Shown here: positions 1 through 25,102 of the stretch, piece by piece | Layout: each line of letters starts with the position of its first letter | Numbering within the stretch: the first letter of the stretch is position 1 | Assembly: GCF_021869535.1 (NCBI RefSeq) | Contig: NW_026262668.1 | Location: 28,644,001-28,708,000, forward strand | Direction: 5' to 3' | From: Mytilus californianus | Lineage: Eukaryota | Length of the DNA stretch: 64,000 nucleotides | Notes under the pieces: model-generated | Seen by the model: the letters and a program-made list of their open reading frames with translations, nothing else | The model's database searches: none | What the model was told of the DNA's origin: nothing | Made by a program: the position numbers and the translations under genes

Positions 1-576
1 TTCATTCATACTTATTCTTGTCACTCTTGCACCGTAATAGTCAATTATATAATCTGATCCGTCAGAAGGCATAACTACTTGAGCTGCAATTAGCAATATG
101 TCTACTAGCTGTCCAAGAAAGAAAAATCCAAGTGTTGAAAATTTCAGAAGTCCTATCGCTGGATATCCAAGATAAAATCTGTCTATTCCAAACATTCCTA
201 AAAAGACAGACAACAGAAGCGCTGTTTCAAATGAATGTCCATTTGTCCATCGACATGAGACATTCTTGTAAAATCCAGGAGTTGTTCCATTAAAAGTCAC
301 TTCAGCTCCACCATATTTTGATGATTTACAAGTCACATTCGCTGCTGGCATACATTCTACTGGAACAGTTTTTGTTGTTTTATCACAATTCTCTTCACTT
401 TGAGTTTCTATATCTACAATTGGCTCTTTGCATACATACTGACCCAGTTGCAAATTTTCACAAGGCAAAGCTTCCTCAAAAGATATTGCATATATCACAT
501 TTGTATAAAATAGAGTCAACATGTGAATTGTCAACACACTTGTCAAATACTTTAGGACATATTTTAGGTAGTTCAT
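1..576 (-). CDS. TM2D1: TM2 domain-containing protein 1 (beta-amyloid binding protein family); intronless CDS, 192 codons visible, 3' end beyond window edge
   Basis: Uninterrupted frame from ATG at 576 to base 1: MNYLKYVLKYLTSVLTIHMLTLFYTNVIYAISFEEALPCENLQLGQYVCKEP...CRWTNGHSFETALLLSVFLGMFGIDRFYLGYPAIGLLKFSTLGFFFLGQLVDILLIAAQVVMPSDGSDYIIDYYGARVTRISMNE. Signal peptide, Cys-rich luminal part and DRFYLG TM2 signature; CxxLxxGQYxC and PSDGSxYIIDYYG match TM2D1. Absent from the ORF track because no stop lies in the window. Confidence 0.95.
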   Translation of the reverse strand, partial: MNYLKYVLKYLTSVLTIHMLTLFYTNVIYAISFEEALPCENLQLGQYVCKEPIVDIETQSEENCDKTTKTVPVECMPAANVTCKSSKYGGAEVTFNGTTPGFYKNVSCRWTNGHSFETALLLSVFLGMFGIDRFYLGYPAIGLLKFSTLGFFFLGQLVDILLIAAQVVMPSDGSDYIIDYYGARVTRISMNE

Positions 577-958
577 CTTTATTTGTCACATAACTAGTAT
601 TACTATTAACTAGGCATACATAAGATATCACCATATGAGAAAGTACTTCCAATTTCGTTGTTGTTTGTTGACAAATTTCACAGGAAATGGTACAGAGTTG
701 TCTAACTTGGAAAATATTACGCAAAATAATCCTGTGTGTTTTATTCCTAAAAAAGATGATTTAAAATGCATTTTCTTTTGTCTGTATCTCGAGATTTAAG
801 GAAATGAATTTCAGGAATGCTTTTTTGCAAAACAGTCCTTTCTTCGCTATAAAATATTTATTCATTATTATTTAATCGGATATACCTACGCAGGTGTTGT
901 TGGTCACCTTTCTAAAACGTGCATAACCAACTTTTTTCTTCGAAAAAGCAAACAAATT
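577..958. promoter_or_regulatory. Probable bidirectional promoter / 5' UTR region shared by TM2D1 and DNTTIP2
   Basis: Divergent start codons only ~380 bp apart (576 minus; 959 or 1038 plus). Transcription start sites not identified. Confidence 0.5.
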
Positions 959-3900
959 ATGTCTTCAAGTTCAAGAAGATATTTCTTCGGATAATGATTC
1001 TGATCTTGATATACTAGCAATAGAAGCTTGTAATAAGATGAAGAAGTTGTTAGAAAAATCAAATAACACTGGGAAAAAGAAACAAATGACCCTAACTCGT
1101 GATAGGAAAATGAAATGTGACACTTTAAACGAAAGTGAGAAAGCAAAATCTAGTCAAAACCTTTTTGACTTTGTAATTGATAAAACACCTCTAAGGTATG
1201 AGAATGAAGAAGTCACCAAAACATTACAACCATCTACAGAGACTGATGACAAAACTGAAGAGAGTTCAAGTCTTGACTCAAACAAGGCAAAAAAGAAAGT
1301 GTAAGACATTTCATTACTTACCTTTAACACTTTTATTTCATTTCATTGTTAACCGAGATGCACATTGAAACGATGATATGTGACTGGATTGCTTCCCTTC
1401 AGTATTAGATACTTAGCTATATATACATGATATATATAGTCAGTCATACATGTAAGTGGTTAAGCTAAGGAAGTACTTCTTTAGCTCAGTCAGTTAAAGC
1501 ACTGCCTTGTAACACAGAAGTCCCAGGTTCGAGTCCCAGTGGAGACAATGTGATTTTCTCATAAGAATCATTGAGAATCATGCTCTCCGGTTATATTTGA
1601 CGCCCAACTAAAAACCCATGGTGGTTAGAGAGGTTTTCAAGCTAGGGTATGTGTTATTAGAGTCATTAATTGATAATGGTATGATGACTCTTGGGGTGGG
1701 GGAAGTTTGACAGGATTGCTTCCCTTCAGTAGTAGATACTTAGTCAGCCGTTGAGCTAAGGAAGTGCTACTTTAGCTCAGTCGGTTAAAGCGCTGCCTTG
1801 TAACACAGAAGTCCCGGTGGAGACAGTGTGATTTTCTCATAAGAATAATGCTCTCCGGATACAGATATATATGTAAATACTAAGTCTGATGTAAAAAAAG
1901 AAAAGTGGGAGATACATAATAATAATTTCACTTATTTGTTCTTCAATTTTTATCAAATTATCAGTTGTGGTTATCTGTTATTCATTTAGAAATGTTTGTG
2001 TGGTGGCTGCCAACTAAATTAATTATTATTGAACTGATCAAAACAATATTCATGACTGTCACTTTGTTTTTTAGTCAAATAGCAAACAAAAATTATATGT
2101 ACGTGTATAAAACCAGTTCTGAACTCTTAAAAAACTATCTTTTTTATACTGCTGTTAATCTCAGATTTGGTGACTGACTGTCAGGACTTTCAGCTGCAGG
2201 GTCCTATGCTAAAAATTTAAAGTGGACTAATCAGGGGGAGATAATTGTAAACTGGATATAACTTTCATTAAAATTTTAGGTATTCGTTATATTATTTTGT
2301 AAAGGGGCCTGGTGTACTTTTTTCTTTGTTTTTTATATATGTTTCATTTTAATAAAGTACATGTATGTTCTTTGATTAGGAAAAATTGTACAATGAATAT
2401 AGGGACATTGTCATGATTAAATGCTACTATATAGCTACATGTAATATTAATCAGTTATATTTAAATTTTAGGGGAAGTTTATCATCAAGTTTACAGACAA
2501 AAATACAAATATCTGATAATTATTTCCAAAAGACATCTGATAACAAATCAAAGAAGAAAACTAGATCCAATGTAGCAGATTTAGATGAGGTATGTATTTT
2601 ACAGGGTTTTAAAAACATTTATGTGTAGTTGACAGACAATGTAATGGATGTATTGTTTGTGATATCAGTGTTCTCCCCAGGATTTTTTTAAGGCGCAAAA
2701 TTCAAGGGCGCATAACTCTTTTTTTAGAGTGAACGTTTGTGATCTGAAGCAATAAGTCATAAATCATGACATGCAATATGAATTGCTTTGTGTTATGTGT
2801 TTAATAATGCAGAGTATTAATGAATTACAAGAATATATATATGAAATAAATTGATTTTAAACACAAGAGTTATTTATATTCAGTCAATTAAAGAAGTCTA
2901 AATATAAATATTCATCTCTACTCTCTGCTCCTTCTTGGGATATTGTTTCAAGATAGTGTTATTTTGTTGGACAGTCTGTTCCTCAACTTTGTCTTTATTC
3001 TCTTCAGGGTTAAAAATGAAACCCCAACTCACAATAACTTTTGCTTATACCCCATTTAACATTTCTAAGCCATGAAAACTCAGTCAGCCACTTGTCATTG
3101 AAACCAGAAACATGGTGCTTGCTTTTATCAATTGCTAAAACTTGAGCTTGGTTGGGATTAGGAGAAGCAACAAAATCTGCTCATACTGACAGTGTAGACG
3201 GAGGTGTATTCCCCTTTTCATTAGAAGTCATTGGTCTGATAAAAACTTCTACTTCCATCATCTACCTTTTGCTTATAATTCACCCCTTTGTTATTTGCAG
3301 AGAACATGTTCATTCAGAATTAATAAAATCGAATATGGTAAGATATTTGGTATACAACTTTTTAAAACAAATTTTTTTTATAAATGAACAGCTGACCAGT
3401 TTCCGTAGTTTCACATTACGCTTCCGTGCGTATTATTGTTTAATCCTATTTTTGGCAGATAGATATAAACAAAACTTTACAAATTCGTTAAAGTCAAAAC
3501 CATTGAAATTATTTACCAGTGACATTATACAGAAGCTGCAGCGATTCTGTACCCGTGTTGATTGTCACATATTTCCCGACGCACGGATTCACGATCGATG
3601 TTCAATGATCATTTTATTTCTAAAAATATGACAGTTTCAGATCTAGACGAATTTACCTTGCAAGCAACATTTTTTTCACTTTCTATTAAAGTTAATCACT
3701 CCTCGTTATCTTTAATCAAACTTTATTTTAATTTGTTCAACTACTAATACTTTCATTCATAGTTTCCATCGTAAATATCTTTAGCAATGTGTATTCAACA
3801 CGTTCATTGGTCGTGTTTAAATAGATTCTTCTTCTCGACCAATGAAAAAAATTTGTTATATAAATTGTCAAGTGATCACACACACGTTGCGTAAATACAA

Positions 3901-6900
3901 TGTATTTGCGATCTATTTCTTCAATTTCTGCACTGAAGTTTTTAAAATTTTTAATTTTCTTCAAAAAATATCTATCTTCTTGATGATCATTTACGCTATT
4001 ACCTGATAAGACTGAGATAAGCGTGGCTCAGGTAAAACTAATTATCAGTTATTGCGTAACACTGACCGACCCATCAGCGGTGATCAGTAACTTGACAATT
4101 TTAACCAACATTTATAATGAAAATGTGAAAATTAACTCGCTGCGGGATCAAGTATTAAGGGACAGCGGCCAATTAAGACGCTGCAGGATCTACAAAAATA
4201 TTATGAAGGTGCTGCGGCACCGCAGCGTCATATCGGCCTGGGGAGAACACTGGATATCCTGATTTATTGTTATAAGTATAATAATCCAAACAAAAGACCT
4301 ATTCAGATATATAGTGTTACATTTAAATACCTTCATTTTTTTAGGGAAACTTATGGATGTTGATTTCAAAATGTCTTGATTTTTAAATGCAGTTTCTTCT
4401 TTTATCATGTTTATCATGTTTATGCTAAATTCTGTTGGCCATATAATATATCAGCCAAGAAGCTTAATAACCTGATAATCAGTGTGTTTGATCTGTTTTT
4501 CATTGCTAATGCTATTTTTTGTTGTTTCATGTTAAATTCAGAGAATATATATGCTTGTATTTGTTGAAAACAATTTTATTTGATTGGACTATCCATTATT
4601 GCAGTATATGAATGGATTGAAGTTAAAACTTAACACCTTTAATAATACCTAAATGACTACCAGTCACAAAATATTGGGCACAGTGATCATGGTGATACAC
4701 AAAAGCTTTTAATAACAATTTGTGAAATACAACTTGCAAATTATTGTAAGTTCAGAAATTTATGCAATATTTTGATTAAATGATGGCAAAAATTGTGACA
4801 GACTAGATTTAGCAAAAACGAAAACTTGCGTTTAAAATTGTGATGGTATAATTTCTTAGAGCATTTCCTGAAATTGCAATAATGTATCTTGCATTTTTTT
4901 ATTGTTCAATAATGAGTCCTGTCGCATAGAAAAATTTAATCGAAAAAGGGGACACTTTACAAAGCAAAAAATAGAAATTTTAGAGGGTAATACAGGCCAA
5001 ATACTTATTCTAAAATGAGATTGGACTAGTATAAAAGGTATTTAACTCGCTAAAATGCAGGAAAAATGACACAATGTAAGATAATCAAAATCAAGTGTTT
5101 GCAAAGGCTTTTCCGTGCAATTACTTCAAATCATCACAGAAATCATTTTGAAACGATCGGTACATATCAAAACATACATAATAATATAAAAATAGCATAA
5201 CTTACAGTGTGGTGGACAATAATACGACAGAAATTGATCCAAAGTTCTCAAGCGAGCAAGCATGTGTTGTGTTAATAAAGGGAGATAATCACACAAAAAG
5301 TATCTATGGAAAGCATGTTAAAAATATGCCAGAACATGTACCAATATTCCCACAACATAATAAGTTTTTATACCCCTTTTATGGACACATTGATATTTTC
5401 ATAGTTACATAAAAGAAGAATTATAACAAGTTATTAGATTAATTTGATTTTGTAATTCTTCTCTGTTGTTACAGGTGATGAAGAAAAGTGTAATAACTCT
5501 AGATTTTGTAATTCTTTACTGTTACAGATTATGAAGAAAAGTGTTATAACTCCAGATTTTGTAATTCTTCACTGTTACAGGTGATGAAGAAAAGTGTAAT
5601 AACTCCAGATTTTGTAAATCTTCTCTGTTGTTACAGGTGATGAAGAAAAGTGTTATAACTCCAGATTTTGTAATTCTTCTCTGTTGTTGCAGGTGATGAA
5701 GAAAAGTGTAATAACTCAAGATTTTGTAAATCTTCTCTGTTGTTACAGGTGATGAAGAAAAGTGTAATAACTCCAGATTTTGTAATTCTTCTCTGTTGTT
5801 GCAGGTGATGAAGAAAAGTGTTTTAACTCCAGATTTTGTAATTCTTCTCTGTTGTATTAGGTGATGAAGAAAAGTGTTATAACTCCAGATTTTGTAAATC
5901 TTCTCTGTTGTCGCAGGTGATGAAGAAAAGTGTAATAACTCCAGATTTTGTAAATCTTCTCTGTTGTTACAGGTGATGAAGAAAAGTGTTATAACTCCAG
6001 ATTTTGTAATTCTTCTCTGTTGTTTCAGGTGAGGAAGAAAAGTGTAATAACTCCAGATTTTGTAATTCTTCTCTGTTGTTGCAGGTGATGAAGAAAAGTG
6101 TTTTAACTCCAGATTTTGTAATTCTTCTCTTTTGTATTAGGTGATGAAGAAAAGTGTAATAACTCCAGATTTTGTAAATCTTCTCTGTTGTTAGAGGTGA
6201 TGAAGAAAAGTGTTATAACTCCAGATTTTGTAATTCTTCTCTGTTGTTACAGGTGATGAAGAAAAGTGTTATAACTCCAGATTGTGTAATTCTTCTCTGT
6301 TGTTACAGGTGATGAAGAAAAGTGTTATAACTCCAGATTTTGTAATTCTTCTCTGTTGTTGCAGGTGATGAAGAAAAGTGTTATAACTCCAGATTTTGTA
6401 ATTCTTCTCTGTTGTTGCAGGTGATGAAGAAAAGTGTTATAACTCCAGATTTTGTAATTCTTCTCTGTTGTTGCAGGTGATGAAGAAAAGTGTCATAACT
6501 CCAGATTTTTTAATTCTTCTTTGTTGTTGCAGGTGATGAAGAAAAGTGTTTTAACTCCAGATTTTGTAATTCTTCTCTGTTGTTACAGGTGATGAAGAAA
6601 AGTGTTATAACTCCAGATTTTGTAATTCTTCTCTGTTGTTAGAGGTGATGAAGAAAAGTGTTATAACTCCAGATTTTGTAATTCTTCTCTGTTGTTACAG
6701 GTGATGAAGAAAAGTGTAATAACTCCAGATTTTGTAAATCTTCTCTGTTGTTACAGGTGATGAAGAAAAGTGTTATAACTCCAGATTTTGTAATTCTTCT
6801 CTGTTGTTGCAGGTGATGAAGAAAAGTGTTATAACTCCAGATTTTGTAATTCTTCTCTGTTGTTGCAGGTGATGAAGAAAAGTGTCATAACTCCAGATTT

Positions 6901-9634
6901 TTTAATTCTTCTTTGTTGTTGCAGGTGATGAAGAAAAGTGTTTTAACTCCAGATTTTGTAATTCTTCTCTGTTGTTACAGGTGATGAAGAAAAGTGTTAT
7001 AACTCCAGATTTTGTAATTCTTCTCTGTTGTTAGAGGTGATGAAGAAAAGTGTTATAACTCCAGATTGTGTAATTCTTCTCTGTTGTTACAGGTGATGAA
7101 GAAAAGTGTTATAACTCCAGATTTTGTAATTCTTCTCTGTTGTTGCAGGTGATGAAGAAAAGTGTTATAACTCAAGATTTTATAATTCTTCTCTGTTGTT
7201 GCAGGTGATGAAGAAAAGTGTTTTAACTCCAGATTTTGTAATTCTTCTCTGTTGTGTTAGGTGATGAAGAAAAGTGTTATAACTCCAGATTTTGTAAATC
7301 TTCTCTGTTGTTGCAGGTGATGAAGAAAAGTGTTTTAACCCCAGATTTTGAGAAACAGTTTTCACTGACACCTTATGAAGAAAGTGTTAGACAACAGAAA
7401 AAACAAAGACGGGTCAGTTTGTTTAATATGTATTGCAAAGACTTTAAATCACAGTTCTAGCCATTCAATATATAGTGATTGATAAAGTTCATAGAGTATC
7501 AGTCTTAAGGATGTACTTTAAAGGTGAAATTAAAAAAATCTAGAATTTAAATTTAATACTATAAGTCAGAAGAGCATTAGTTAAGGAACAAAATAAGCTA
7601 ACAATATTGATAGGTTATGGAGCTCCTTTTCGAGATATTTGATTTAAAAAAAATTGTGGGAAAAGGCTGACTCAGACTTTAACTGTATATTTGCATTGGT
7701 ATTATTTGGGTCTCAAATCGAAAGAAAAGAAATCTATAATCTGCTTAAATTTTGGTAAATGACCTTTTATGAGCTATTGAAGTCTTATATGAAAAAAAAA
7801 TGGGTGTTATGGTGCAAAATATTTTACCCTGTATCATGAGAAAACAACCAAGGAGTCCAAACATCTGACACAAATTCCTAAACCTGACCTAAGTACATCC
7901 TTAAGACAGAAGTTGAAATATAATACAAATGAAAAAAGAAGTTCCAATTTTTAAAAATGAAATTTAAAATAAAAAAAATCAGATTTAATTCTACTGAATG
8001 TACTTGGTATTTGTTGATGACTGCAAAATGAAAAATAATTAAAAAAAAAACAACACTGCAGCTAATGAGGACTCATGTTTCTACCAAACCATGGTAAGTA
8101 GTCAAACCAAGCTCACTCCGGATTGTATTACTTACTTGGTAGACATGATAAATACAGATAATTATCTCTTTATTATTAAATTATGATAAGATTATGATAC
8201 TTTTTAGGTTAATAACAATATAGGTAAACACTGTGCTCACTAAATAGAGTGGACTGGGTGGACAAAGCTAGCAGTTTCCTCCACTCTGTTCCAATTTCCA
8301 CTGAGGATGAATGAAAAAGAGCACATTCAATTTTAAGCAGTAGTGTAAAATGTTCAATTAATATGAATTGATTTTTGTTGCATTCATTCAACTTTTAAAG
8401 TAACAATGTTAATCTACAGTGAAGTGAAACATTAAAATATGAAAACTAGCAAATTGATATTATTTCTCAAGATTATATATCATATATTATATCATGTCTG
8501 CATGATTTCCAAACACAACCTTTACAAATCATGTTAAATTGTGTTTTTTTTTTATATCCTGTAAACTTTCGAAAAAACTGAAATAAATTTGAAATGAAAA
8601 TTAATTTGCAGAAGGAGAGAGAGAAGACAAAGGGAAAGAACTGGTATAACATGGAAGCACCTGAAATGACAGAAGAGAAAAAAAATGATTTGATGGTTGT
8701 CCATATGAGGAAAGCATTGGATCCTAAACGATTCTATAAAAATAATGATACAGTGTCAATACCTAAGTATTTCCAAGTAAGTGTAACATAATTTATTTAC
8801 CTTAATTTGTTAAATTACACTTTCTGTTATCATGTTTATGGAATGCAATAAAACAATGTAGTTTCCTGATAGAATTTTGGTATTAAACATATCAATGAAT
8901 TTGCTGCTTTATAGGGCTTGGGATAAATTGGAGCATGGTGGGTTTTTTAGACGGCTGTCTGCTTTTAGGGACCGTGTATAATCCTATTTTCTTCAAGATC
9001 TCTAATTTTTTGTGGCTTTACATTTCAGTCTTATCAAAATATGCTCTGCATCTACTATCATTCATATTCTTATCATATTTATCATGTCCGTCATTATAAA
9101 CAGAAAATGCTCAGCGTAGTTAATTTATTTAATTTACATTTTCAGCTTGGAACAGTAGTAGAAAGTTCTGCTGATTTCTACCACTCGAGGGTTCCCAAGA
9201 AACAGAGGAAATCTAATATGGTAGAAGAACTTCTAGCTGATGCTGAATTTAGAACGTAAGTGTTGAATTTAAAGTACTTTTATTTTCCAGACAAACAAGC
9301 AGACAGATTGGAGGAACCCCTATCACTATATGTCGCCACTATAGAAACAAATAGGGATAAGGTGTATTTAAACTGAAATGAAACACTTATTCTACAAATG
9401 TATACAAAACATATAAGACATGATTAATGAAACACAGACATTTATGGAGGAATGAAAATACAAATTTATCTGACAGTATAATTAACATTTTTTTAATTTT
9501 TATTTTATAACTGAATACATATTTGTTTTTCCAATAGGTACAACAAGAGGAAGTATGTTGAGATACAAGAACAGAAAAGAAAAGCACAAGGTCCTTACAA
9601 ACACATGAAAAGACTCAAGAAAAATAAAAGATGA
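959..9634 (+). CDS. DNTTIP2: DNTTIP2 / Fcf2-domain pre-rRNA processing protein. Exons 959(or 1038)-1300, 2472-2589, 7317-7412, 8612-8776, 9146-9255, 9538-9634
   Basis: GT-AG junctions with consistent phases (2,0,0,0,2); 849 nt = 282 aa + stop from ATG 1038. Spliced C-terminus VMKKSVLTPDFEKQFSLTPYEES...KEREKTKGKNWYNMEAPEMTEEKKNDLMVVHMRKALDPKRFYKNND...PKYFQLGTVVESSADFYHSRVPKKQRKSNMVEELLADAEFRTYNKRKYVEIQ is the Fcf2 domain. The start codon is ambiguous (see findings). Confidence 0.93.
1379..1863 (+). mobile_element. TRIM (miniature non-autonomous LTR retrotransposon) with tRNA-derived sequence in both LTRs; Helenus-like
   Basis: LTR1 1379-1595 (TG start), PBS-like TGACGCCCAAC 1598-1608, PPT GGGGTGGGGGAAG 1693-1705, LTR2 1706-1863 (CA end), perfect 4-bp TSD GATA at 1375-1378 and 1864-1867. 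Confidence 0.85.
1474..1547 (+). other. tRNA-Thr(TGT)-like Pol III cassette inside LTR1 (second copy ~1764-1825 lacks box B); probably not a functional tRNA gene
   Basis: Box A TAGCTCAGTCAG, anticodon arm CTGCC-TTGTAAC-ACAG, box B GGTTCGAGTCC; poor acceptor stem. Confidence 0.65.
2666..4252. mobile_element. Non-autonomous DNA transposon with 16-bp perfect TIRs (CAGTGTTCTCCCCAGG)
   Basis: TIRs at 2666-2681 and 4237-4252; GATAT directly flanks both ends; no transposase ORF. Confidence 0.8.
5446..7349 (+). repeat. 56-bp minisatellite, 34 copies; unit = 3' splice site + first 33 nt of DNTTIP2 exon 3
   Basis: Consensus GTGATGAAGAAAAGTGTTATAACTCCAGATTTTGTAATTCTTCTCTGTTGTT(A/G)CAG. Unit starts at 5475 and 5528 (53-bp variants), then 5581+56n up to 7317, which is the real exon. 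Confidence 0.97.
7509..7900. mobile_element. Kolobok-like non-autonomous element (TTAA TSD, GG termini)
   Basis: TTAA|GGATGTACTT ... AAGTACATCC|TTAA; 10-bp perfect TIR. Confidence 0.75.
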
Positions 9635-11367
9635 TCATTTTATATAATAGTTAAATTTTTATATGAAACTTATTGTAATATTATATATACTATGGTTATA
9701 TCTGTCATTGTCCCAAGTTTAACATGAAACACATTGATATCTAGGGAGAAAATAACAAAAAGTACAATTAGAAGCTTTCAGGCTGCACTATGATGTAATT
9801 TCGTTTATTTAGAATTTGTCACATTTCTTTAAATGGAGTTTGGTTCTGGTTATGTTTCACACATTCAGGGTGGGGGGGGGGGGGAGAAAGTTCATCAAAT
9901 CAGAGATCGGGTTGTCGAATCGTTTCCTTGCTCACAAATTGTTAATTATTTGCCTTACAAGTATTTGTCATATATAGCCAATTTGGAAAGGGGGTCTCAC
10001 ATACATTTTGTAGTTAGTCCTGTTAGTGGTCACCACACTTGTAGGAACATATTAAACAGGAAGAATTAACACCTAATGTGGCTTCCCAGATTGCAGGGAT
10101 ATTAAAGTGAGGGACCCACATATAATATTGCTTTTCATGTGATAAAGTATGCATTATATAATTTTATTATTTTAAAAAGCTTTCTGACCAATTTAGGTTT
10201 AATTTAAATTGTCTTATGGAAAACCACATGGTAAAACGATAAAAAGAAATTAATAATAATAAAACATATTTAGTCACAGAATTTCAAAGTCATTTCAACA
10301 AAATTAAGCCTATCTAGCAGTTCGATCATATTTGTTATGTAGAATTTTATTATATTGACTCCCCTCTTTTCCAATACAATTATGTAAAGGAATATATATA
10401 TATATATATCCAGTTTTACTTTTTACTGTTTTCATACTTTAAATGGGTTTTAAGATAATGACACTTCTATCCCAGCTGTTGATCTAATATCTGTCTAATA
10501 TAAATAACCAGACAATGTTGTCCGTTATTTAGGTGATCCCCAGTATTTTCCCGCGAAATGATCACATGTGTCATGGTTGTCAACAAAAGGAACATGTGGT
10601 CAGGGAATTCATTTGTTTTCTGGATTACTGCTTTTATTGATTTAGTTAGGATATAAACATTCCATTTAATGTACAGTCGAACATTTGCATTTATAGAATA
10701 CCGGTAGTTTGCAAACAATTTTTACTTTTCAAAGAAACTAGGTCATGATCGTTCATTGGTCCTTGTTCAACCATGCGAGACCATGTAAATAATGTAATCA
10801 GCTGTCAGTGTACATCCCTTGAGGCAATGTTCACACCAATTAACAATAATTAGATTTCTTAATTGCCACTGACATGATATTTGGATTAGGGATATCTGAA
10901 ATTTAACTTCAATCTATTGAATTTTCAAGTCTGGCGAACAGTAAAATAGGCGTGGCGCTGGGAATTTTAGTGTGGTGCTAGAAATTTAAGCGTGGTGAAC
11001 CGCCACGCTTAAATAGGTCATGGTGATCCCTGGAACTTCAAATCAGAGCTTCCTGAAATTTGTTATCAGGCTTTATGTGAACATGCTTTACTGTGTTTTT
11101 CTTTTTCAGATTTAAAGGCTTTCAAATGGAAAGCATTGTCAAGAACCTTATTCCATGGGACTTTTGCCTGGGGTCTTTTTTTTTTCTGAGAAACCAATAT
11201 TGTAGTAACCAACTAAAAACTGTAAGCTGCTACACCCTACACAAATGTGATGAACATTTCATATATGACCATTATGTGTTAGAATATATAAGTTTCAGAA
11301 AACAGGAGGTTGATGAGTGATGAATCATGATGACATGAAGCCTGATATTAAATTTCAGGAAGTTTTT

Positions 11368-13920: not shown

Positions 13921-14769
13921 TTTATTGACCAGCCTGTCGGTCAGTCAGTCAGTTAATTTCATTTCAAGAAGACAACTTAATGTGTTTGAGCTTTTGATTT
14001 TGGCATTTGATAATGAACTTTCCGTTTTGAGTTTTCCTTGAAGTTCGGTATTTTTGTTTTTCCACTTTTTATATGACACAATCGATAAAATTAAAGACTG
14101 TGAAAACATGCCTCTAGTGAGTTGATACACAGCTAGACACATCGTATAGGTCATCCACAACTTGCGAGTTTACTGATATAGTGTCGATTTCACTTCCTCG
14201 TATCTTTTATAGAAGAGTTTTTTTTAAGGAGAATACCCCTGTGTGAATCTAGTCCATTTAGTGCGAACATGCACGAGCGTCACGTATATTGAAATATTTT
14301 AACACAATACGATGGAACAGAGGGTATTTAACTGCAAATAACATTCACGGTACCATTTGTTTTGCATCAGTTGCGCATAACGACAATTTTAGAAAGTCTC
14401 TTCTGTGATGTTTTATGCCAACATATTTGAGCTCAATTCCGAATACAAACGCTGAAGAGTTGATAAAACCAGAAAGACCTTACGAAAAAAGCCTGACCCG
14501 GATAAGGAAAAATTTTCACTAGTCTCATAAGGACAAGGAGTGTGTATAATGATGAAAATACAAGTCGACATCAGTTCTAGACAACATCGATACATTATGT
14601 CATACATGCATAGTCGTGTAAGTAGGGGTTCACTTTAAGATGAAATTAAACCATAAACTCTACACGCATAAGCAGTTTTCATAAGGGGTAACAGTTTAAA
14701 AAAAAAAAGCGGAAGATACCAAGGGAGCCTTCAAAACTCATAAGACGAACTCGCTAGCCAATATAAAAA

Positions 14770-14960
14770 TAATGAGATGTGGCTTGATTGTCAATGAGAT
14801 AACTATCCACCAAAGTTCAAATGACCATGATGTTAGTAATTATAGGTCACCATACGGCCTTTACCAATGTGTAAAACCCATTCCATATACCGAACTATAA
14901 AAGGCCTTGACATTTAAAATGTGAAACAATTCAATCGAGAAAACTAACTGTCTAATTCAA
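14770..14960 (+). repeat. Abundant dispersed repeat (…GATGTGG…ATTGCCAATGAGACAACT… family); other copies ~22110-22200, 23480-23810(-), 34715-34900, 41180-41280, 42580-42890(-), 56100-56145(-)
   Basis: Recurrent near-identical sequence in both orientations; family assignment not made. Confidence 0.7.
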
Positions 14961-15149
14961 AGCAATTTATTATAAGTAAACCAAATAGGACAGACATGCA
15001 TGAACGATAAACACTGATTTACATGCTCCTGACTTTGGACAGACAAATAAAGAATGTGGCGGGGTTAAACATGTTATGAGCGCTTAATCCTCCACATAAG
15101 CTGGGCAGTGGTGTAACAGAACAAAATAAGAGCAAACTGGAAAAATCAG

Positions 15150-15845
15150 CTGCATATTGCTTAACTCAATAGATCGGTCCGAAGAACAAAAACAAGTTAC
15201 ATAAAAACAATAAATCCCACCAAAGAAGCCAGTTTTATTATTTTGTAAGCCAGGCGCTTAATTCGTCTACAAAAGACGTCCCAGTGACGCTCGAATAAAA
15301 AGTTAAAAGAACAAATAAAGTACGAAAGTAAAGAGCATTGAAGACTAACGATTCCGAAAAGTTTAGCCAAATATAGCTAAGGTAATATATTCTTGGGGAA
15401 GAAAATCCTAAGTATTCAAACAATTCAATGTCTGGTAAACACTTAATTTATTAATATTACCATAGACACAAAACACCGATATAAGAGTCCTCGCAGTTAC
15501 TGAAATCTAGTTCAAAGTCAATTGCACCTTATAAACCATGTTCTCCCAGTCTCAAGTTTAATATTCACCTAAGCATATACAATTTACAGGTAGTGTTAAT
15601 TTAGATCAATGGAGGGTCAGTTTATTTTTAAATCTTTTTAAAGTTTCAACATTTCACAACAACACAAAAATTAAAGGTTAATCCCGTCACTAAAAATAGA
15701 AGAGATTTTCCAGTAAACAAATGGGTATTGCATGTAGCAATTAGGAGGACAAAACACGAATACGTGTTTTAATTATACTGGCTTAGGAACGAAATAAAAA
15801 TGTAGACAGAGACAGACCGATTGATTTTTTTTACAGAAACGAAAA
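15150..15845 (+). repeat. ~0.7-kb direct repeat, partner ~17555-18207 (and ~35105-35800 / ~37495-38140 in copy B)
   Basis: Shared long motifs, e.g. GGTTAATCCCGTCACTAAAAATAG...GGACAAAACACGAATACGTG...AAAAATGTAGACAG; more diverged than the large duplication. Confidence 0.8.
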
Positions 15846-16083
15846 AGACTAGGGACGAAATATAGAGTACCATCAGGAAAGTGAAGAGCAAATATTTGAT
15901 ATCAATGGAATAAGCTTATAAACAGAACAAAAAGGTCGACTCTGACGTGAAGAGGAAATATTTGTTAGAGAGTGGATAGACACAAGGGCGAAACAAAACG
16001 TACAGAACAGTTTTGTTGTAGAATGTGAAACAGTTTAGGTACGAAACAAAAAATTTGATAGGAACGCAAAAAGTCAATATTTG

Positions 16084-19000
16084 ATGGAAATGGAAAAAAT
16101 GAGCAGGTCTTCGAGTTTAATGTCAAAAGAGAGTTTTGAATCAGCGATTGAACTAATGCCAACTGACAGAAGCACAGATGGAAATGGTCGATGTTTTTCA
16201 GATGAGAACCAGGATTGTAAAATTAACAAAAAATCTGGTGGAAAGAATAGTCATGTATTCAAAGACCACAAATGTTGTTTGTTAATTGCTACTATCGTAT
16301 TTATCATGTTTATAGTGTTTCTGAGTATCTTCATCATCATAAATTACAATCGCTGTGAGGTATATATAATTGACTACAATACAGATAATTTATTATTGTG
16401 TTTCAAATTAAATGATTCGGTAATAGCAATAGTTATATTTGTTTGTTTCAAGTAAATAAGAATATTCTTTTTTGTTTGTTTAATACTTTTTGCCAATGAT
16501 TCTATTCGTGAAAATTGTAGTTTTGCAATATATATATATGAATATTTGTACTGTATATCTACGATAATCATTATTTACACTAAATTGAAATATGACAAAG
16601 CTATTTAAAACGTGGTTAAAGTATGATTCTATCCGTTTAATGAGATATTAATTTTCACATTACAGCCAACTCGTGAATATTCTTTTGTTTCCGGAAACTG
16701 CACTAACTGTACAAAAGAAAATAAAACAGAGGAAAAAGGTATTTGATTTAAAACTAAAAGCACTACTACAACATTTTTGAATTATGATGTGTATACCCCG
16801 TTTATCGATGTGTACGCATGACATAAAACATGGCATGGCCAAACAAAATATTTGGAAAAGAGAATACAAAGATTTCCTTTTACTAGTTTTACAACTTTAT
16901 TTTTCATCAGATTGTATGGGTTTTGTTTCGAGTTCTTATAAAAATCACCTTAACAAGGAATATAAGATATACAGAGCGCACTTTGGATTAACCTAACATT
17001 CGAGCTTTTTAATTCTATTTCAACTTAAACGCGTTCTTATAAAAACTTCAATCTACAGCTTTGAATTAGATTTTTGTTTACTGTAAATTCAGAAATTTTT
17101 GCGATGCTTTATTTTTGCACAAATTGTGACGGAATTGGAATTGTCAAAATGTAATTTCGTATTTTAAACTTTGATACAATTATTTGTATTCTTCATTTAC
17201 TGAATTGAAACAAGTTATCTCGGAATTTTGTCCAATCTTCAAAAACCGCAATAATAATTGCACGCAAAAGTTCTGAATTTCAAGGTACCTTTTGTTTTTT
17301 TATGTTTCCATCTACGATAAAGCGTCCAACAAGTCGCAATTTAACAAGTAGCAATTCTGTTTTTAAAGTCAGTTTGAAGGGATGGTTTTCATTCTGATTT
17401 ATGAGAGGTTTACATTGTATGCTGTTGTAGAAAAAAGTAGCCGACAATCGCTCAATTGCATGTAAATTTGTCATTTCCCCGTCGATTTTTCACATTTAAT
17501 GGATTCAAAGCTAAAAGCTATAGAAATTCAGATACACATTTGGTTGGTGTCAAATAACTCAAAAGATCGGTCCAATGCAAAAAACCAACTAACATAAAAA
17601 ACAATAAAACCTATCAAAGATGTCACATTGATGAATTTGTACGCCAGACGCGCGCTTCGTCTACAAAAGACATTTCAGTGACGCTCGAATAAAAAAATGT
17701 TAAAAGACCAAATCTAGTACGACGTCAAAGAGCATTGAAAACAATGATTCCAAAATGTTTAACGAATTGTAGCTAAGGTGATCTATTCCTGGGGTAGGAT
17801 ATCTTAAGTATTCAAACAATTCAAAGTTTTGTAAACAGTTAACTTATTTATATTACCATAAACACAAAGAACCGATATAAGTGTCCTCGCAGTTATTGAA
17901 ATCAAGTTCAAAGCCAATTACACCTAATAAATCCAAGCATACAAAATATACAGGTAGTGTTGATTTAGACCAATAAAAAGGTTCATTCTATTTTTAAATC
18001 ATTTTTAAAGTTCCAACATTTCATCAGACAAAAATTAAAAGGTTAATCCCGTCACTAAAAATAGAAAAGATTTTCCAGTAAACTAATGGTATTGCATGTA
18101 GCAATCAGGAGGACAAAACACGAATACGTGTTTTGATTATACTGGCTTAGGAACGAAATAAAAATGTAGACAGAAACAGACATATTGATTTTTTTACAGA
18201 AACGAATAAGATTAAAAAAATGATTAAACATGCAAATATCCCCGAGAGGGACAAAAACTAGTTACAATTGATTGAAAAGTAACAAAGAGTGAAATAGATT
18301 TTATTAGATTGCATTTCATCAGAAATTCACACTGAGATCACCCCATTGATTGATAGAGTATTTGATCTTTTATTAACTGCTGATGGGTAACTGCCACTTT
18401 TTTGCCGCACAATGAAATCATCTATTCACGGTCTTCCATGTCATTTCATTCTTTGCTTGAATATATGTGTTACTTGTTAATAAATCAATGTATTCCATTG
18501 TTATGTTCTTTATCTTATGTTCTCTTCAGAATCACCTAGCAAAGAAGTCAAAGATACAGAATTTCAAGTTACACTTTGGGACTCATCGATGACAGTTATT
18601 ATAAAAACCCATGAAACGCTATCTCTCCAACTCAGTCGATATGACGACGACACCACAATGATGATATGTAGAAATAACAGAACGTCGTATGAGCTCTTCT
18701 GTAACTCCCAAGCGAAACGTAATTGCCAGTCTGTTCCTGTTCCTGTCAATAAATCAGTTACCATCAGAAATGAAACACAAGATGAACAGATCATATTTAA
18801 TATTGTGGCAAAATGTATAAATCAAAAAGTTGGTATCAAATGGATAAATATTTAGCCTGTAATTGGCATGTATTTTCAAAAACGTTATTAGGTTTCGTCA
18901 TCTTTCTGATTTGAAAAGAACTAAGCAATGTTACTTTAGAATAGTTTTTAATGATGCATGAATAGGTGAAGATGTTAAACTTCTCGGAAAATCTATTTTA

Positions 19001-19963
19001 CTTAATATTGAACTAGTTGTGGGATCCCAATTTAGATCACTCCATACTTGTCTGTCTTTACCCAAACTTGTGAGTTTATCATATACGCATGCTTGCTTTT
19101 CCCTGTGTGGATGAATAAAACCAACCAAGAGGGGAGGAATTCATTAAGAAGACACATGCGTCTAGTTAGTTGTACGAAGATATTTTCATAAAACATGTTT
19201 TCGAGGTTCGGATATTTTTTTGTGAATTAATCTCGGAGTACATTTGTTTTTGAATTGTAAACATCCTATCTGATACTACTACTTAGTTTATAACTGCATG
19301 CAGCTGGTGGTATATTTGTAATTTCCAGCTTATATCAATTGGCCAGTATCCAGTGTTTTCGTCGAGACATTATGAAAATTCTAAGTTTTTATTAAAACTT
19401 TTAATTTAGAAATTTATTATTTTTACTATAACCAGAGTTACAAATGTTTGCAGTGTTTAGTCCCTGTTCCTTAAATGTTTTGTTTCACAGAAATGTTTTG
19501 TATCGAGCGTACCTGTCGGAGGTAATCTGAGAAAAATTTTCATGCGCATGAAATTCAATATGATACTTTTTTGATTTTCTTTGACATGTTGTTCTAAGGG
19601 AGTTTTCCTGATTGTGTGACCGTTTACAAATTAAAAAAATAATTAAATCATTCTTCTATCCTGTATTCTTTTCTTTTTTCATTGAGAATTTCGTTGGAAA
19701 AACTCCAATTCGTACTTATACTAAATTTGTTTTGCTGTTTCACAAAAAAAAAATCACCTAAATCGTGTTGATAATTTATATCACAACTGCTTAAATTAAA
19801 AGGTTTACTTAACTAAAGTGTGTCTAGCGAATTATTGCGTGAATCTTTATTAACTATAACAGGAGTATATGACACTAGATATAGTGATGAAGTTTCAGTG
19901 ACCGGATCAATTCACTTTCAAACTGATAAACATCAAATTGTTATAAATTTGGTTCACGCCTAG
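16084..19963 (+). CDS. Gene A: uncharacterised type II membrane glycoprotein, ~250 aa. Exons 16084-16359, 16666-16738, 18530-18832, 19863-19963
   Basis: GT-AG junctions with phases 0,1,1; total 753 nt in frame. ~63-aa cytoplasmic tail, KCC, one TM (LLIATIVFIMFIVFLSIFIII), ectodomain with sequons NCT, NKT, NRT, NKS, NET. All exons open and junctions conserved in copy B. The last exon is the least certain. Confidence 0.8.
17081..17285. mobile_element. ~205-bp MITE with TA TSD (copy at 37021-37225; degenerate relative ~4745-4890)
   Basis: TA|CTGTAAATTCAGAA ... TTCTGAATTTCAAGG|TA imperfect TIRs. Confidence 0.7.
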
Positions 19964-21855: not shown

Positions 21856-24513
21856 ATTTTTTAGACATACCAGTTTTATAACTAAGTATTTGTAATACAA
21901 CAACTACCTCTTCTTATATTTCATGGAAAAATATCTAGGAAAAATACTAGACTGCAAAGTTGGATAGAAACCATACACAGTGAGGACTTTATTAACTTTT
22001 GTATCTCAGCTTGTGTTATTATAATGCACATAGGTGCGTGTGGATTAAATCATATACTAAAATTTTTGTACTTGCATATTACTTAATACTAGCCTCACCT
22101 GAATATATAGAAAAAGAAGATGTTGTATGATTACCAATGAGACAACTCTCCATAATAGACCAAATCACACAGAAATTAACAACTATAGGTCACCGTACGG
22201 CTTTAGCATAGTATAATAGTATGAATACATTGAAAATTGAAATTGAACAAATGAAACGATATCAGGTTCATGTTTATGAAACATCAACATAGGGCGAATA
22301 TATCAAGGGTAATAAAACGCAGTAGTAGGGAATAGGTTATATCACCATGACCAAAGGAGAAAAGTAGAACAATAGTTAGCTGAACACTAGATAGAAAACA
22401 AGAGATGAAGAAACATGGAGGTTAAATCAACCGCCCGTGAAGGAACTTCTAGTAATGACAGCAATCGTATAACTCGTCTTAAAATTCGAAAATATTCCAT
22501 GTGCCATAACAAAGATAGATGACAGGTCTCTTGTCTAACCGTTATATATTTCCTAATTTATAAACTATCGGTAGATGCAAGTTTTGTAACCCTTTTACAT
22601 GTTTGAAATAAAAATAACCTTTTTTTGGACAAATGTTAAACAAGACCAATACATATAGAAACAACATATACATTGAAAAATAAAGTAGCCCAAATGCTAT
22701 ACAGAAAACTAAAGCAAAAGCAACAAAACCCCTTTAAGTGGGATCAGGCTTCCCCTAATAAGTTTTGGCTCCACCAGTTGTGAAGATCGGTATCTATGAT
22801 GCGTTTGCTTGCTCATTTCAAGAAAAATCCGTCTAAAAGTCTCATTCGGTGATGTTACAATCAAAGAAAAGAGGCCTGGATGGCTTTTGAAAAATATCAG
22901 TGTTCAGCTGTGACATATCAAACAGAAATCCTGAAATATCGTAACAACTGATAATTATTACTCCATATGCTGGGTTTCTTGAATGTGAGTACCCAACAAG
23001 TAAACTTCGAGATGGAAAATCAAAGTCATCTCTTTTATATCAACCGACCTTTATTTTCGACTTTTAGATTCAAGTCAATGTATGAAGCTGACTGAAGATT
23101 TCTGATTTCTTTATTTTAAGTTCATTTAAATAGATGCGATTAACCTTAATATACAAAGTAAATTAAAATTACATTTTATAGATTTGGTGCGTCCGAAGCG
23201 CATTTCTAAATATACCTTCATCAAGAACGTAAAAGCTTACATAATTAAAAGCAAAGGCTATATTGCAAAACAAAAGATAGCAACATTAAGATCAACATTG
23301 AGGGAGTCCTAACCAAAGATTTTTAATAATTTCTCAATTTTCAAATTTCTGATTTTGAGAAAGGTATGTTAAAAAATCATTTCAGAACCGAAGCACAGAC
23401 TAATAAGCTGACGATGTCATTTGTGACTTGGAGGACTAAAGAGCTGAATCAGCAGCGGTATCGACCCGGTAATAGAAAATGAAAATAAACACCACTGTCC
23501 AAAGTGTAGGGCGCCCACTAACATGTTTAACCCCGCCACATTCTCTATGTGCCTGGCCCATGTCAGGAACCTGTAATTCAGTGGTTGTCATTTGTTGCTG
23601 TGTTACATATTTGTTTTTCGTCATTATTTTGTACATAAGTTAGGCTGTCAGTTTTCTTGTATGATTTTTTTTACATTTGTCATTTCGGGGCCTTGTATAG
23701 CTGACTATGCGGTATGGGCTTTGCTCATTGTTGAAGACCGTACAGTGACCTATAGTTGTTAATTTCTGTGTCATTTGGTCTTATCATTGGCAATCATACC
23801 ACATCTTCTTTTGATGCGTCCGATGCTTTCTTCTTGATAAACTGTGAACAAAAAAAACCCGCTCCATTGCAAGAATTTGAAATTCAAGAAAGTACAAGTA
23901 CTTGAATACATTAGGAGCTTTGTGACCAAAAGTGACATATAATGATTTGAAAAAAGTTAATCAACCGTAAAGTTCATGCTCTTTACCTGTATCGTTTCAA
24001 TATGTAATTGACGTACACCTAAAATATCATCCCCATGATATTTTTGACCCCAAATTATAGCTGATTTTATATCCACTTTTTTAGCCGACCTTCATTTCAG
24101 AATAAAGAAGTACATGTCATATTTTTGAGGCAATAGGTTTGTTAAATTGGTTATGTACAATTCATCTTCAAGTTCTTAATAAAGGCTTCATAGCTATTTG
24201 AAAATCTGCGACACTTGACCTGAGAATTTGGGAGACTGGAACCATTAAAGTCTTAAAACAGTCAATTATCTTTATGGCATCAACAATTTTATTTATTGTG
24301 ACTTCAACATTTTACTGGAACCTTTGTAATCTCTAGTAATGGCGGACAAATATCAATAAGGTATATTCAAACTGAGATGAAACACACATTCTATAGTTGT
24401 GTACAAAACATATAAAACATAATAAATGAAGCACAGACATTTATGGTGGAATGAAAATACAATTTTATCAGCATAACATTTTTTTCACTGAAAACATATT
24501 TGTTTCTTAACAG

Positions 24514-24610
24514 GTACAACAAGAGGAAGTATGTTGAAATACAAGAACAGAAAAGGAAAGCTAAAGGTCTATACAAACACATGAAAAGACTGAAGAAAAA
24601 TAAAAGATGA
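24514..24610 (+). other. Duplicated DNTTIP2 terminal exon with intact acceptor, frame and stop (alternative last exon or pseudo-exon)
   Basis: TTTCTTAACAG|G TAC AAC... encodes YNKRKYVEIQEQKRKAKGLYKHMKRLKKNKR* versus ...KAQGPYK... at 9538-9634; the 3' UTR is also duplicated to ~24845. Confidence 0.9.
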
Positions 24611-25102
24611 TCATTTTATATAATAGTTAAATTTTTATATGAAACTTATTGTAATATTAAATGTACTATGGTTATATCTGTCATTGTCCCAAGTTTAACA
24701 TGAAGCACATTGATATATAAGGAGAAAATAACAAACAGTACAATTAAATTTATAGCTTTCAGGCTGCACCGTTATGTGATTTCATTATTTAGAATTTGTC
24801 ACATTCCTTTAAATGGAGTTTGGTTCTGGTCATGTTACAGACATTCAAAATTGTCTGTCATTTATATTTCACTCTCATATCCATTCAGTAATGTAGAACA
24901 TGGTTTGTAAAACCCGGTTTGAGAATATCTGTTCTATGCTTGAGTGACTAAAGATAGAAAAACATAGATGAAAATTATCATAGGATACCCTACTGCCTTC
25001 GACAATGAGCTAAACCTATGCTATATAGTAAGCAATAAAAGATCCCTGTATGCACAATGTAAAACAATTAAAAAGAGAAAACCAACATCTTGATTTTTAT
25101 AT

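What the first reader, a model, noticed from the sequence alone, without database searches (positions are those of the whole stretch)
5446..7412. A minisatellite built from a splice acceptor: 33 decoy 3' splice sites in front of an essential exon
Seen: the 56-bp unit is the exon-3 polypyrimidine tract + YAG + the first 11 codons (VMKKSV[I/L]TPDF, the conserved KKSVITPDF motif of DNTTIP2). It is amplified to 34 copies and only the last continues into the real exon. Reading on from an upstream acceptor hits a stop about 20 codons later (…VILLCCYR*), so only the most distal, nearly identical acceptor gives protein. Inference: the correct site must be chosen by exon definition from the 7413 donor, and array length could tune productive splicing/NMD of a ribosome-biogenesis gene. 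The array is likely length-polymorphic.
Basis: partly seen in the sequence, partly recalled or inferred. Interest (0 to 1): 0.85.

Follow-up and report, generated by a model that had tools for sequence, protein, structure and literature searches.

The report
Splice-acceptor minisatellite in mussel DNTTIP2
In the California mussel, the end of an intron plus the start of a conserved exon of the ribosome-assembly gene DNTTIP2/Fcf2 is copied 34 times in a row; this is a real but already known kind of repeat ("mirage" minisatellite), and the mRNA seen uses only the last copy.

Summary
A 56-bp unit (29 nt of intron end plus the first 27 nt of exon 3) stands 34 times at 5446-7350. Thirty upstream copies keep a YAG acceptor and three have GAG. 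Every upstream copy reads into a stop within 20 codons.

The window is Mytilus californianus. The annotated 282-aa protein and a 974-nt transcript contig fit use of the last acceptor (7317) only. No sampled RNA reads were laid on the array.

The same array, with the same 5' junction, has 4, 9 and 10 copies at three M. coruscus loci. It is single-copy in M. trossulus, another Mytilus of that group, an unidentified bivalve and Pinctada. The single-copy species already carry GATTTTG on both sides of the acceptor, so the array most likely began by slippage or unequal exchange between these short repeats.

This is a boundary-spanning "mirage" minisatellite, known from amphioxus and mirrored by the human F7 intron-7 repeat. 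This scan has already reported at least ten others on other DNA of the same genome.

Choice of the last site by exon definition is plausible but untested. Tuning of splicing or NMD by copy number has no support. It is a new member of a known kind, of modest interest.

The parts
5446..7350 (+). 56-bp x 34 minisatellite. Each unit holds 29 nt of intron 2 end (polypyrimidine tract plus YAG) and the first 27 nt of exon 3.
   Evidence: TRF; units in register.
5446..5452 (+). Intronic copy of the 7-bp direct repeat GATTTTG that marks the 5' edge of the array.
   Evidence: Read from the sequence. The same junction TTAATTT|GATTTTG is present at all M. coruscus loci, and the repeat is present in single-copy species.
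7344..7350 (+). Exonic copy of GATTTTG (exon 3 nt 28-34) that marks the 3' edge of the array.
7288..7316 (+). Authentic polypyrimidine tract and CAG acceptor, inside the last unit.
   Evidence: Junction DLDE|VMKKSVL in P0154; register.
7317..7412 (+). Exon 3 (96 nt, phase 0), encoding the conserved KKSV[I/L]TPDFEK motif. Its donor GTCAGT starts at 7413.
2472..2589 (+). Exon 2. The donor GAG|GTATGT has its GT at 2590.
   Evidence: X1 transcript contig piece 2472-2587.
6362..6675 (+). 314-bp stretch repeated without any mismatch 7 units (392 bp) downstream at 6754-7067. This points to a recent multi-unit duplication inside the array.
   Evidence: unit-type string with OPQMR occurring twice.
1038..1300 (+). 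Coding part of exon 1 as annotated. The upstream ATG at 959 is out of frame because of a 2-nt deletion.
8612..8776 (+). Exon 4, first half of the Fcf2 domain.
   Evidence: Pfam PF08698, E = 4.4e-19.
9146..9255 (+). Exon 5, second half of the Fcf2 domain.
   Evidence: Pfam PF08698, E = 9.5e-10.
9538..9634 (+). Coding part of exon 6, up to and including the stop codon.

Best explanation
This is a boundary-spanning ('mirage'-type) minisatellite in intron 2 of the Mytilus californianus DNTTIP2/Fcf2 gene.

Origin. It arose in the common lineage of M. californianus and M. coruscus. The ancestral acceptor region was already flanked by a short direct repeat (GATTTTG), once about 29 nt before the AG and once at exon nt 28-34. 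Replication slippage or unequal exchange between the two copies duplicated the 56 bp between them.

Growth. In-register unequal exchange then expanded and reshuffled the array, to 4-10 copies in M. coruscus and 34 in M. californianus. Because the last unit is also the start of the real exon, this turnover can change the coding copy. That fits the Ile/Leu difference in the conserved motif between loci.

Effect on the gene. The gene still works because splicing joins exon 2 to the last, exon-attached copy. The upstream copies are silent, or are used so rarely, giving stop-containing and probably NMD-degraded RNA, that they do not show.

How the last copy is chosen (inferred). Most likely, only the last acceptor is backed by the full 96-nt purine-rich exon and its own donor (exon definition). 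A decoy would define only a 56-nt pseudo-exon, and the donor of that pseudo-exon overlaps the next acceptor.

Shown here: anatomy, gene identity, species distribution, the microhomology, and the main splice form.
Inferred: the mechanism of origin, the way the site is chosen, and neutrality.
For: - Array and unit anatomy.
- Source and gene model: the window is identical to M. californianus GCA_021869535.1. Protein P0154 equals the gene model with junction 2589|7317.
- Transcript contig: the 974-nt contig of run X1 lies on 2472-2587. The exon-3 bin depth of 6.41 equals that contig's depth (13.1) times 98/200, and the flanking array bin is 0.
- RNA raw reads of run X21: depth is about 5.2 and 3.5 in the exon-2 and exon-3 bins, against 0 in eight of nine array bins and 0.13 in the ninth.
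- Species series: single copy in M. trossulus L001 and in another Mytilus, L006; 4, 9 and 10 copies in M. coruscus L002, L003 and L004; single copy in L007 and in Pinctada L008.
- Origin: all array-bearing loci share the same 5' junction, and GATTTTG (TGATTTTGAA in L001) is present on both sides of the acceptor in the single-copy species.
- Age: unit variants are shared between the two species at -4, -3, +18 and +19.
- Recent turnover: a perfect 314-bp internal duplication.
- Coding copy: the Ile/Leu state of the coding copy differs between loci, and outgroups have Ile.
- Published precedents with silent pseudo-sites: amphioxus mirages (PMC3087553, PMC3902484) and the human F7 intron-7 repeat (PMC1557585).
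- Earlier notes of this scan report the same kind of array in at least ten other genes of this genome.
Against: - RNA evidence is thin. Exon depth is only about 8x in a 6% sample of one run. The exon 2-exon 3 joint was not among the joint rows printed (36 rows were hidden). How the tool treats reads that fit many places in the array is not stated.
- NMD would hide decoy use in steady-state RNA.
- The copy number of 34 rests on one assembly. Short-read contigs of other individuals do not span the array.
- The three M. coruscus loci are only 90-94% alike outside the array, so whether they are alleles or paralogues is open.
- The real donor is no closer to the consensus than the pseudo-donors, so exon definition alone may not explain the choice.
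- Neutrality is assumed, not measured.
Confidence: 0.78

Rival explanations
1. One reading: the 33 decoy acceptors compete with the real one, part of the transcripts is lost to NMD, and array length therefore sets the output of a ribosome-biogenesis gene.
For: - Thirty decoys are as good as the real site over positions -29 to +27. Several are identical to the unit consensus.
- They are transcribed first.
- Every decoy product has a premature stop.
- Copy number differs widely between species and loci.
Against: - No RNA reads were laid on the array, and the transcript contig and annotated protein fit the last site only.
- No truncated decoy-type protein is on record in the 5.8-billion-protein collection.
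- Published analogues report silent pseudo-sites (PMC3087553, PMC3902484, PMC1557585).
- The same kind of array sits in many unrelated genes of this genome, which fits a mutational process better than gene-specific regulation.
Confidence: 0.1
2. A recursive-splicing chain. Every unit is a juxtaposed 3' and 5' splice site (Y-tract, CAG|GTGATG). Joining exon 2 (…GAG) to any decoy would rebuild a 5' splice site, GAG|GTGATG, that can splice on to a later unit. Decoy use would then correct itself and leave no trace in the mRNA.
For: The motif is present in 32 of the 33 upstream units and in the real one; unit 2 has CAG|ATTATG instead. Exon 2 ends in GAG. Absence of decoy products in mRNA is compatible with this.
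Against: - Positions +5 and +6 (TG) depart from the GTRAGT consensus.
- The intron is only 4.7 kb.
- The same rebuilt site at the real junction would predict exon-3 skipping, which the annotated protein does not show.
- No intron reads show a sawtooth pattern or intermediates.
- L007 and Pinctada (L008) have AG|AT at this junction, so the motif is not a conserved device.
- An earlier follow-up on a similar PSMA4 array judged the ratchet idea unsupported (not checked here).
Confidence: 0.05
3. Assembly artefact: the array, or its length of 34 units, is an error of the reference assembly.
For: Only one M. californianus assembly was available. Short-read contigs of another run of the same organism label leave most of the array uncovered.
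Against: - The same unit with the same 5' junction occurs at three independent M. coruscus loci.
- Contigs of a sister-species run (93-96% alike) run from the 5' flank into the first unit and lie on units at both ends of the array.
- The 23 distinct unit types are arranged in an ordered higher-order pattern, not as a collapsed or stuttered repeat.
Confidence: 0.03

Closest known systems
'Mirage' minisatellites of amphioxus (Adh3, globins BflGb6 and BflGb9, troponin C, PGBD5), as described in PMC3087553 and PMC3902484
   Same: Tandem copies of a short unit that spans an exon-intron boundary and carries the splice signal. Units are of similar size (10-160 bp there, 56 bp here). Normal splicing to the exon-attached copy persists. 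Copy number differs between haplotypes. Unit turnover resembles concerted evolution.
   Different: This one is in a mollusc, not a cephalochordate. It has far more copies (34 against 3-6 for the globin array). A dated species series (1, then 4-10, then 34 copies) and the founding microhomology can be read here. Somatic instability, reported for Adh3, was not tested.
Human F7 intron-7 37-bp VNTR (PMC1557585)
   Same: A polymorphic minisatellite (5-9 copies) whose boundary unit contains the authentic splice site, followed by identical pseudo-sites that stay silent. Only the exon-attached site is used.
   Different: F7 multiplies the donor, and the first copy is used. Here the acceptor is multiplied, and the last copy is used. 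The 5'-to-3' scanning explanation given for F7 cannot be carried over directly, because here the chosen site is the one transcribed last.
Recursive splice sites (ratchet points) of long Drosophila and vertebrate introns (own knowledge)
   Same: A polypyrimidine tract and AG directly followed by GT, so that a 5' splice site is rebuilt after the first ligation.
   Different: Here the motif is a by-product of an exon that happens to begin with GTGATG. The sites are 56 nt apart in a 4.7-kb intron, the match to the donor consensus is partial, and there is no evidence of stepwise splicing.
Other junction-anchored arrays noted by this scan in the same genome (NPHP4, ANKS3, MRPS15, RIMOC1, PSMA4, WDR7, WDR44, UPB1, an adenylate cyclase, GM130)
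   Same: Same genome, and the same architecture of an exon edge plus splice signal in tandem. Where followed up, the same outcome was reported: only the exon-attached copy is used (AI notes, not checked here).
   Different: Different genes and unit sequences. For this locus the founding direct repeat and the copy numbers in related species were worked out.

Membership tests
Mirage (exon-intron boundary-spanning) minisatellite | Head-to-tail tandem array with a minisatellite-sized unit. | tested here: met
   Period 56, 34.1 copies, 93% matches.
Mirage (exon-intron boundary-spanning) minisatellite | The unit spans an exon-intron boundary and includes the splice signal, and the terminal unit is the authentic junction. 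| tested here: met
   The unit is 29 nt of intron with YAG plus 27 nt of exon 3. The last unit continues into exon 3, as in protein P0154.
Mirage (exon-intron boundary-spanning) minisatellite | Regular splicing persists and the extra copies are not seen in mRNA. | tested here: met
   Annotated protein. A 974-nt transcript contig and raw RNA reads cover exons 2 and 3 but not the array. Depth is low, so rare use cannot be excluded.
Mirage (exon-intron boundary-spanning) minisatellite | Length instability or polymorphism. | tested here: inconclusive
   There are 4, 9 and 10 copies at three M. coruscus loci and 34 in M. californianus, and a perfect 314-bp internal duplication. Variation among M. 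californianus individuals could not be measured.
Recursive splice site | Polypyrimidine tract and AG directly followed by a consensus 5' splice site. | tested here: inconclusive
   CAG|GTGATG stands in 32 of 33 upstream units. It matches the consensus from -3 to +4 but not at +5 and +6 (consensus from own knowledge).
Recursive splice site | Stepwise intron removal seen in RNA (sawtooth read profile, lariats, intermediates). | tested here: not met
   There is no sense-strand read depth over the array or a gradient in intron 2 in run X21. Depth is too low to be final.
Recursive splice site | The motif is conserved in related species. | tested here: not met
   AG|GT stands at this junction in Mytilus only. 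L007 and Pinctada have AG|AT.
Fcf2 / DNTTIP2 protein family (the host gene) | Fcf2 domain above Pfam's cut-off. | tested here: met
   PF08698 scores 69 bits on exon 4 and 39 bits on exon 5, against a cut-off of 27. Homologues are named DNTTIP2-like.

The most novel reading that the evidence does not exclude
The array is not inert. Its 33 acceptor-plus-donor units would act as a copy-number-dependent sink or ratchet for the spliceosome, so that the growth from 1 to 34 units changed the yield or timing of DNTTIP2 mRNA in M. californianus. Array turnover would also feed new variants into a conserved coding motif.
Probability: 0.07. Interest if true: 0.7.

Novelty: new member of a known kind. Interest (0 to 1): 0.3.

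Why it matters
By itself this is one more silent splice-junction minisatellite.

Its use is as a clean natural series. The same acceptor is present once (M. edulis group), 4-10 times (M. coruscus) and 34 times (M. californianus), with the founding 7-bp direct repeat still readable. That makes it a ready test case for two questions:
- How does a spliceosome pick one of many equal 3' splice sites when the right one is transcribed last?
- Does such an array cost the gene anything?

It also shows a concrete side effect. The coding start of a conserved exon takes part in array turnover, so variants that arose in unselected copies can move into the protein (Ile/Leu here).

Together with the many similar arrays noted in this genome, it raises a genome-wide question: are mussel minisatellites really enriched at splice junctions, and if so, why?

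Tried and rejected
1. RNA structure hiding the decoys. The last three units plus exon 3 fold no better than shuffles (z = +1.25; 183 of 200 shuffles fold at least as well). Rejected.

2. Search for truncated proteins that would come from decoy use, with the first 150 residues of P0154 as query. The one hit found (P0264), like the cluster-5 members P0262 and P0263, is an exon-1 product ending KKKV or NKKV, as expected from read-through into intron 1. None comes from a decoy.

3. That donor matches the consensus at about 5 of 9 positions, the next acceptor is 23 nt away, and no reads support it. Set aside.

4. The long ORFs on the minus strand of the array (up to 204 aa) simply follow from a stop-free repeat unit. 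They are not a gene.

5. Conservation of the AG in all 34 units as a sign of selection. Only 13 of 56 columns vary at all, and most variants are spread by multi-unit duplications. An untouched AG is therefore expected by chance (rough estimate about 0.6). No inference drawn.

6. The read-laying run did not print the exon 2-exon 3 joint (36 joint rows hidden), and the tool is capped at one call. Junction counts per acceptor could therefore not be obtained.

7. No paper in the searched library combines Mytilus, minisatellite, intron and splice site. The second outgroup assembly, GCA_965363235, is named in no paper, and its species name was cut off in the output.

Full report
**The array**

Tandem Repeats Finder reports a single array at 5446-7350 with period 56, 34.1 copies, 93% matches and no indels. 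In register there are 34 junction positions from 5475 to 7317. All are spaced 56 bp except the first two steps, which are 53 bp.

Each unit consists of 29 nt of intron end (GATTTTGTAATTCTTCTCTGTTGTTRCAG) and the first 27 nt of exon 3 (GTGATGAAGAAAAGTGTTATAACTCCA). The triplet before the junction is CAG in 28 units, TAG in 3 and GAG in 3. The AG itself is never lost.

Reading on from any of the 33 upstream junctions gives VMKKSV[I/L]TPDF, then 6-9 further residues, then a stop. Only unit 34 continues into the exon.

**Gene and organism**

The plus-strand gene has six coding exons:

| Exon | Coordinates |
|---|---|
| 1 (coding part) | 1038-1300 |
| 2 | 2472-2589 |
| 3 | 7317-7412 |
| 4 | 8612-8776 |
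| 5 | 9146-9255 |
| 6 (coding part, with stop) | 9538-9634 |

These were read. Exons 4 and 5 match Pfam Fcf2 (PF08698) at 4.4e-19 and 9.5e-10.

A search with exon 4, followed by a search with the best hit, led to a 282-aa protein. Its source names it 'deoxynucleotidyltransferase terminal-interacting protein 2-like [Mytilus californianus]' (P0154). Its sequence equals this exon model residue for residue, including the junction DLDE|VMKKSVLTPDFEKQ. The locus that encodes it (GCA_021869535.1, JAKFGE010000002.1) is identical to the window over 9597 of 9597 bases.

The motif at the start of exon 3 is conserved in other bivalves, a nemertean and a hemichordate.

**RNA evidence**

- *Raw RNA reads of run X21* (about 6% of the run sampled). 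Depth is 5.2 in the exon-2 bin and 3.5 in the exon-3 bin, all with the first mate on the minus strand, as expected for a plus-strand gene in a stranded library. Eight of the nine array bins have depth 0 and the ninth has 0.13.
- *Other reads in intron 2.* The reads at 2672-4271 lie in the other orientation and are mostly 90-95% alike. I take them for repeat copies from elsewhere.
- *Transcript contig of run X1.* A 974-nt contig (depth 13.1) lies on 2472-2587 without a mismatch. The X1 depth in the exon-3 bin (6.41) is what that contig would give over 98 bases, and the array bin next to it is 0. I take this as the contig joining exon 2 to 7315/7317. The two-base ambiguity arises because AG stands on both sides.

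The joint itself was not among the rows printed (36 were hidden), so I have no count per acceptor.

A search for truncated proteins that decoy use would give found only exon-1 read-through products.

In sum, the main mRNA uses the last acceptor. Decoy use above roughly a tenth of steady-state mRNA is unlikely. Rarer use, or use hidden by NMD, cannot be excluded.

**Related species**

| Locus | Species or assembly | Copies of the unit |
|---|---|---|
| L001 | M. trossulus | 1 |
| L006 | another Mytilus, GCA_965363235.1 (species name cut off) | 1 |
| L002 | M. coruscus, GCA_011752425.2 | 4 |
| L003 | M. coruscus, GCA_011752425.2 | 9 |
| L004 | M. coruscus, GCA_011752425.2 | 10 |
| L007 | unidentified bivalve | 1 |
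| L008 | Pinctada imbricata | 1 |
| window | M. californianus | 34 |

- L001 has a single acceptor: TTGTAG followed by GTGATGAAAAAAAGTG.
- GCA_011752425.2 is used as the M. coruscus genome in PMC12838483 and PMC9965057.
- All three M. coruscus loci share the window's 5' junction TTAATTT|GATTTTG.
- The annotated M. coruscus proteins also use the last copy.
- The three M. coruscus loci are only 90-94% alike outside the array. Whether they are divergent haplotigs or paralogues stays open.
- L007 and L008 keep the same intron position, with AG|AT at the junction.
- Contigs of a coded sister-species DNA run (93-96% alike) also run from the 5' flank into the first unit and lie on units at both ends of the array.

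The array is thus specific to the californianus/coruscus lineage and varies between 4 and 34 copies.

**Origin**

The array begins with GATTTTG (5446-5452) and ends with the same seven bases inside exon 3 (7344-7350). The single-copy species already have this direct repeat on both sides of the acceptor. It is GATTTTG in L006 and the longer TGATTTTGAA in L001, with its two copies 60 bp apart there because of four extra bases in the tract.

A first duplication by slippage or unequal exchange between these repeats gives exactly the unit seen. This step is inferred.

**Later turnover**

Later growth was by in-register exchange of several units at a time.

- The 34 units fall into 23 types arranged in recurring orders.
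- One stretch of 314 bp (6362-6675) recurs without a mismatch seven units further on.
- Unit variants at -4 (A/G), -3 (C/T), +18 (T/A) and +19 (A/T) are shared by the M. californianus and M. coruscus arrays. This suggests that an array of several units existed before the two species split.
- The codon for the fifth residue of the motif is Ile in all outgroups and in two M. coruscus coding copies. It is Leu in the third M. coruscus locus and in M. californianus, and Leu-type units are scattered through the arrays. The coding copy therefore seems to take part in the turnover.

**How the last site is chosen**

The decoys do not differ from the real site in tract, AG or the first 27 exon bases, so intrinsic 3' site strength cannot decide. 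What is unique to unit 34 is everything after exon base 34: the rest of a 96-nt purine-rich exon and its donor CGG|GTCAGT.

Two qualifications apply.

- Every decoy is followed 56 nt later by CAG|GTGATG. By my count this matches the donor consensus at 7 of 9 positions, the same number as the real donor. That pseudo-donor coincides with the next acceptor, so the two signals would compete for the same bases. The intron it would open to the next acceptor but one is only 56 nt.
I found no support for stepwise splicing, and the motif is not conserved outside Mytilus.

RNA folding offers no explanation either (z = +1.25).

**Comparison with what is known**

Tandem repeats that span an exon-intron boundary were named 'mirages' in amphioxus (Adh3, globins, troponin C, PGBD5). 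They are reported to vary in length and not to disturb splicing (PMC3087553, PMC3902484).

The human F7 gene has a polymorphic 37-bp repeat whose first unit holds the authentic donor of intron 7. Its identical pseudo-donors are functional but silent (PMC1557585).

The present array meets the defining features of this class (see membership test).

An earlier follow-up note of this scan first pointed me to the term and to the species. I checked both against the papers and the protein and locus data. The scan has already reported the same kind of array in at least ten other genes of this genome, so this is not a first sighting.

No paper in the searched library links Mytilus with such repeats. 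That shows only that none was found there.

**Verdict**

It is a new member of a known kind. What this follow-up adds is the copy-number series across species, the founding microhomology, and the involvement of the coding copy in array turnover.

Noticed in passing
window 959-1040: The M. californianus reference lacks two bases after 975 (…AGTTCAAG^AAGAT…) that all four other Mytilus loci have (…AGTTCAAGTGAAGAT…). The usual start MSSSSSEDISSDNDSD is therefore out of frame, and the annotated protein starts 27 residues later, at 1038. This may be a real lineage change or an assembly error.
   Followed up: partly
window 24346-24847: A second copy of the last DNTTIP2 exon with its flanks (85.6% like 9347-9867). 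Its reading frame is intact (YNKRKYVEIQEQKRKAKGLYKHMKRLKKNKR, then stop). In M. coruscus locus L003 the last two exons likewise lie about 10 kb further downstream than in L002.
   Followed up: partly
window 7472-8071 (intron 3): A very high-copy repeat. Contig depth is about 250,000-300,000 in DNA runs of two species, and RNA reads lie on both strands. It is probably a short interspersed element.
   Followed up: no
window 1-585, minus strand: A divergently oriented neighbour gene with a TM2 domain (PF05154, E = 3.2e-16). The same neighbour stands next to DNTTIP2 in M. trossulus, M. coruscus, L006 and L007, so the gene pair is conserved.
   Followed up: partly
window 1379-1863 (intron 1): Two tRNA-like stretches (…TAGCTCAGTCGGTTAAAGC…GTCCCAGGTTCGAGTCCC…) lie about 300 bp apart.
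   Followed up: no
window 14416-19226 and 34548-39155: Long stretches with near-identical open reading frames about 20 kb apart (for example 16039-16452 and 35996-36400; 18484-18852 and 38416-38781). This points to a large segmental duplication within the window.
   Followed up: no
L004 501-13455 (M. coruscus): The annotated protein P0157 fuses a CUB-domain N-terminus to the Fcf2 part. This looks like a merged gene model at the third M. coruscus locus.
   Followed up: no
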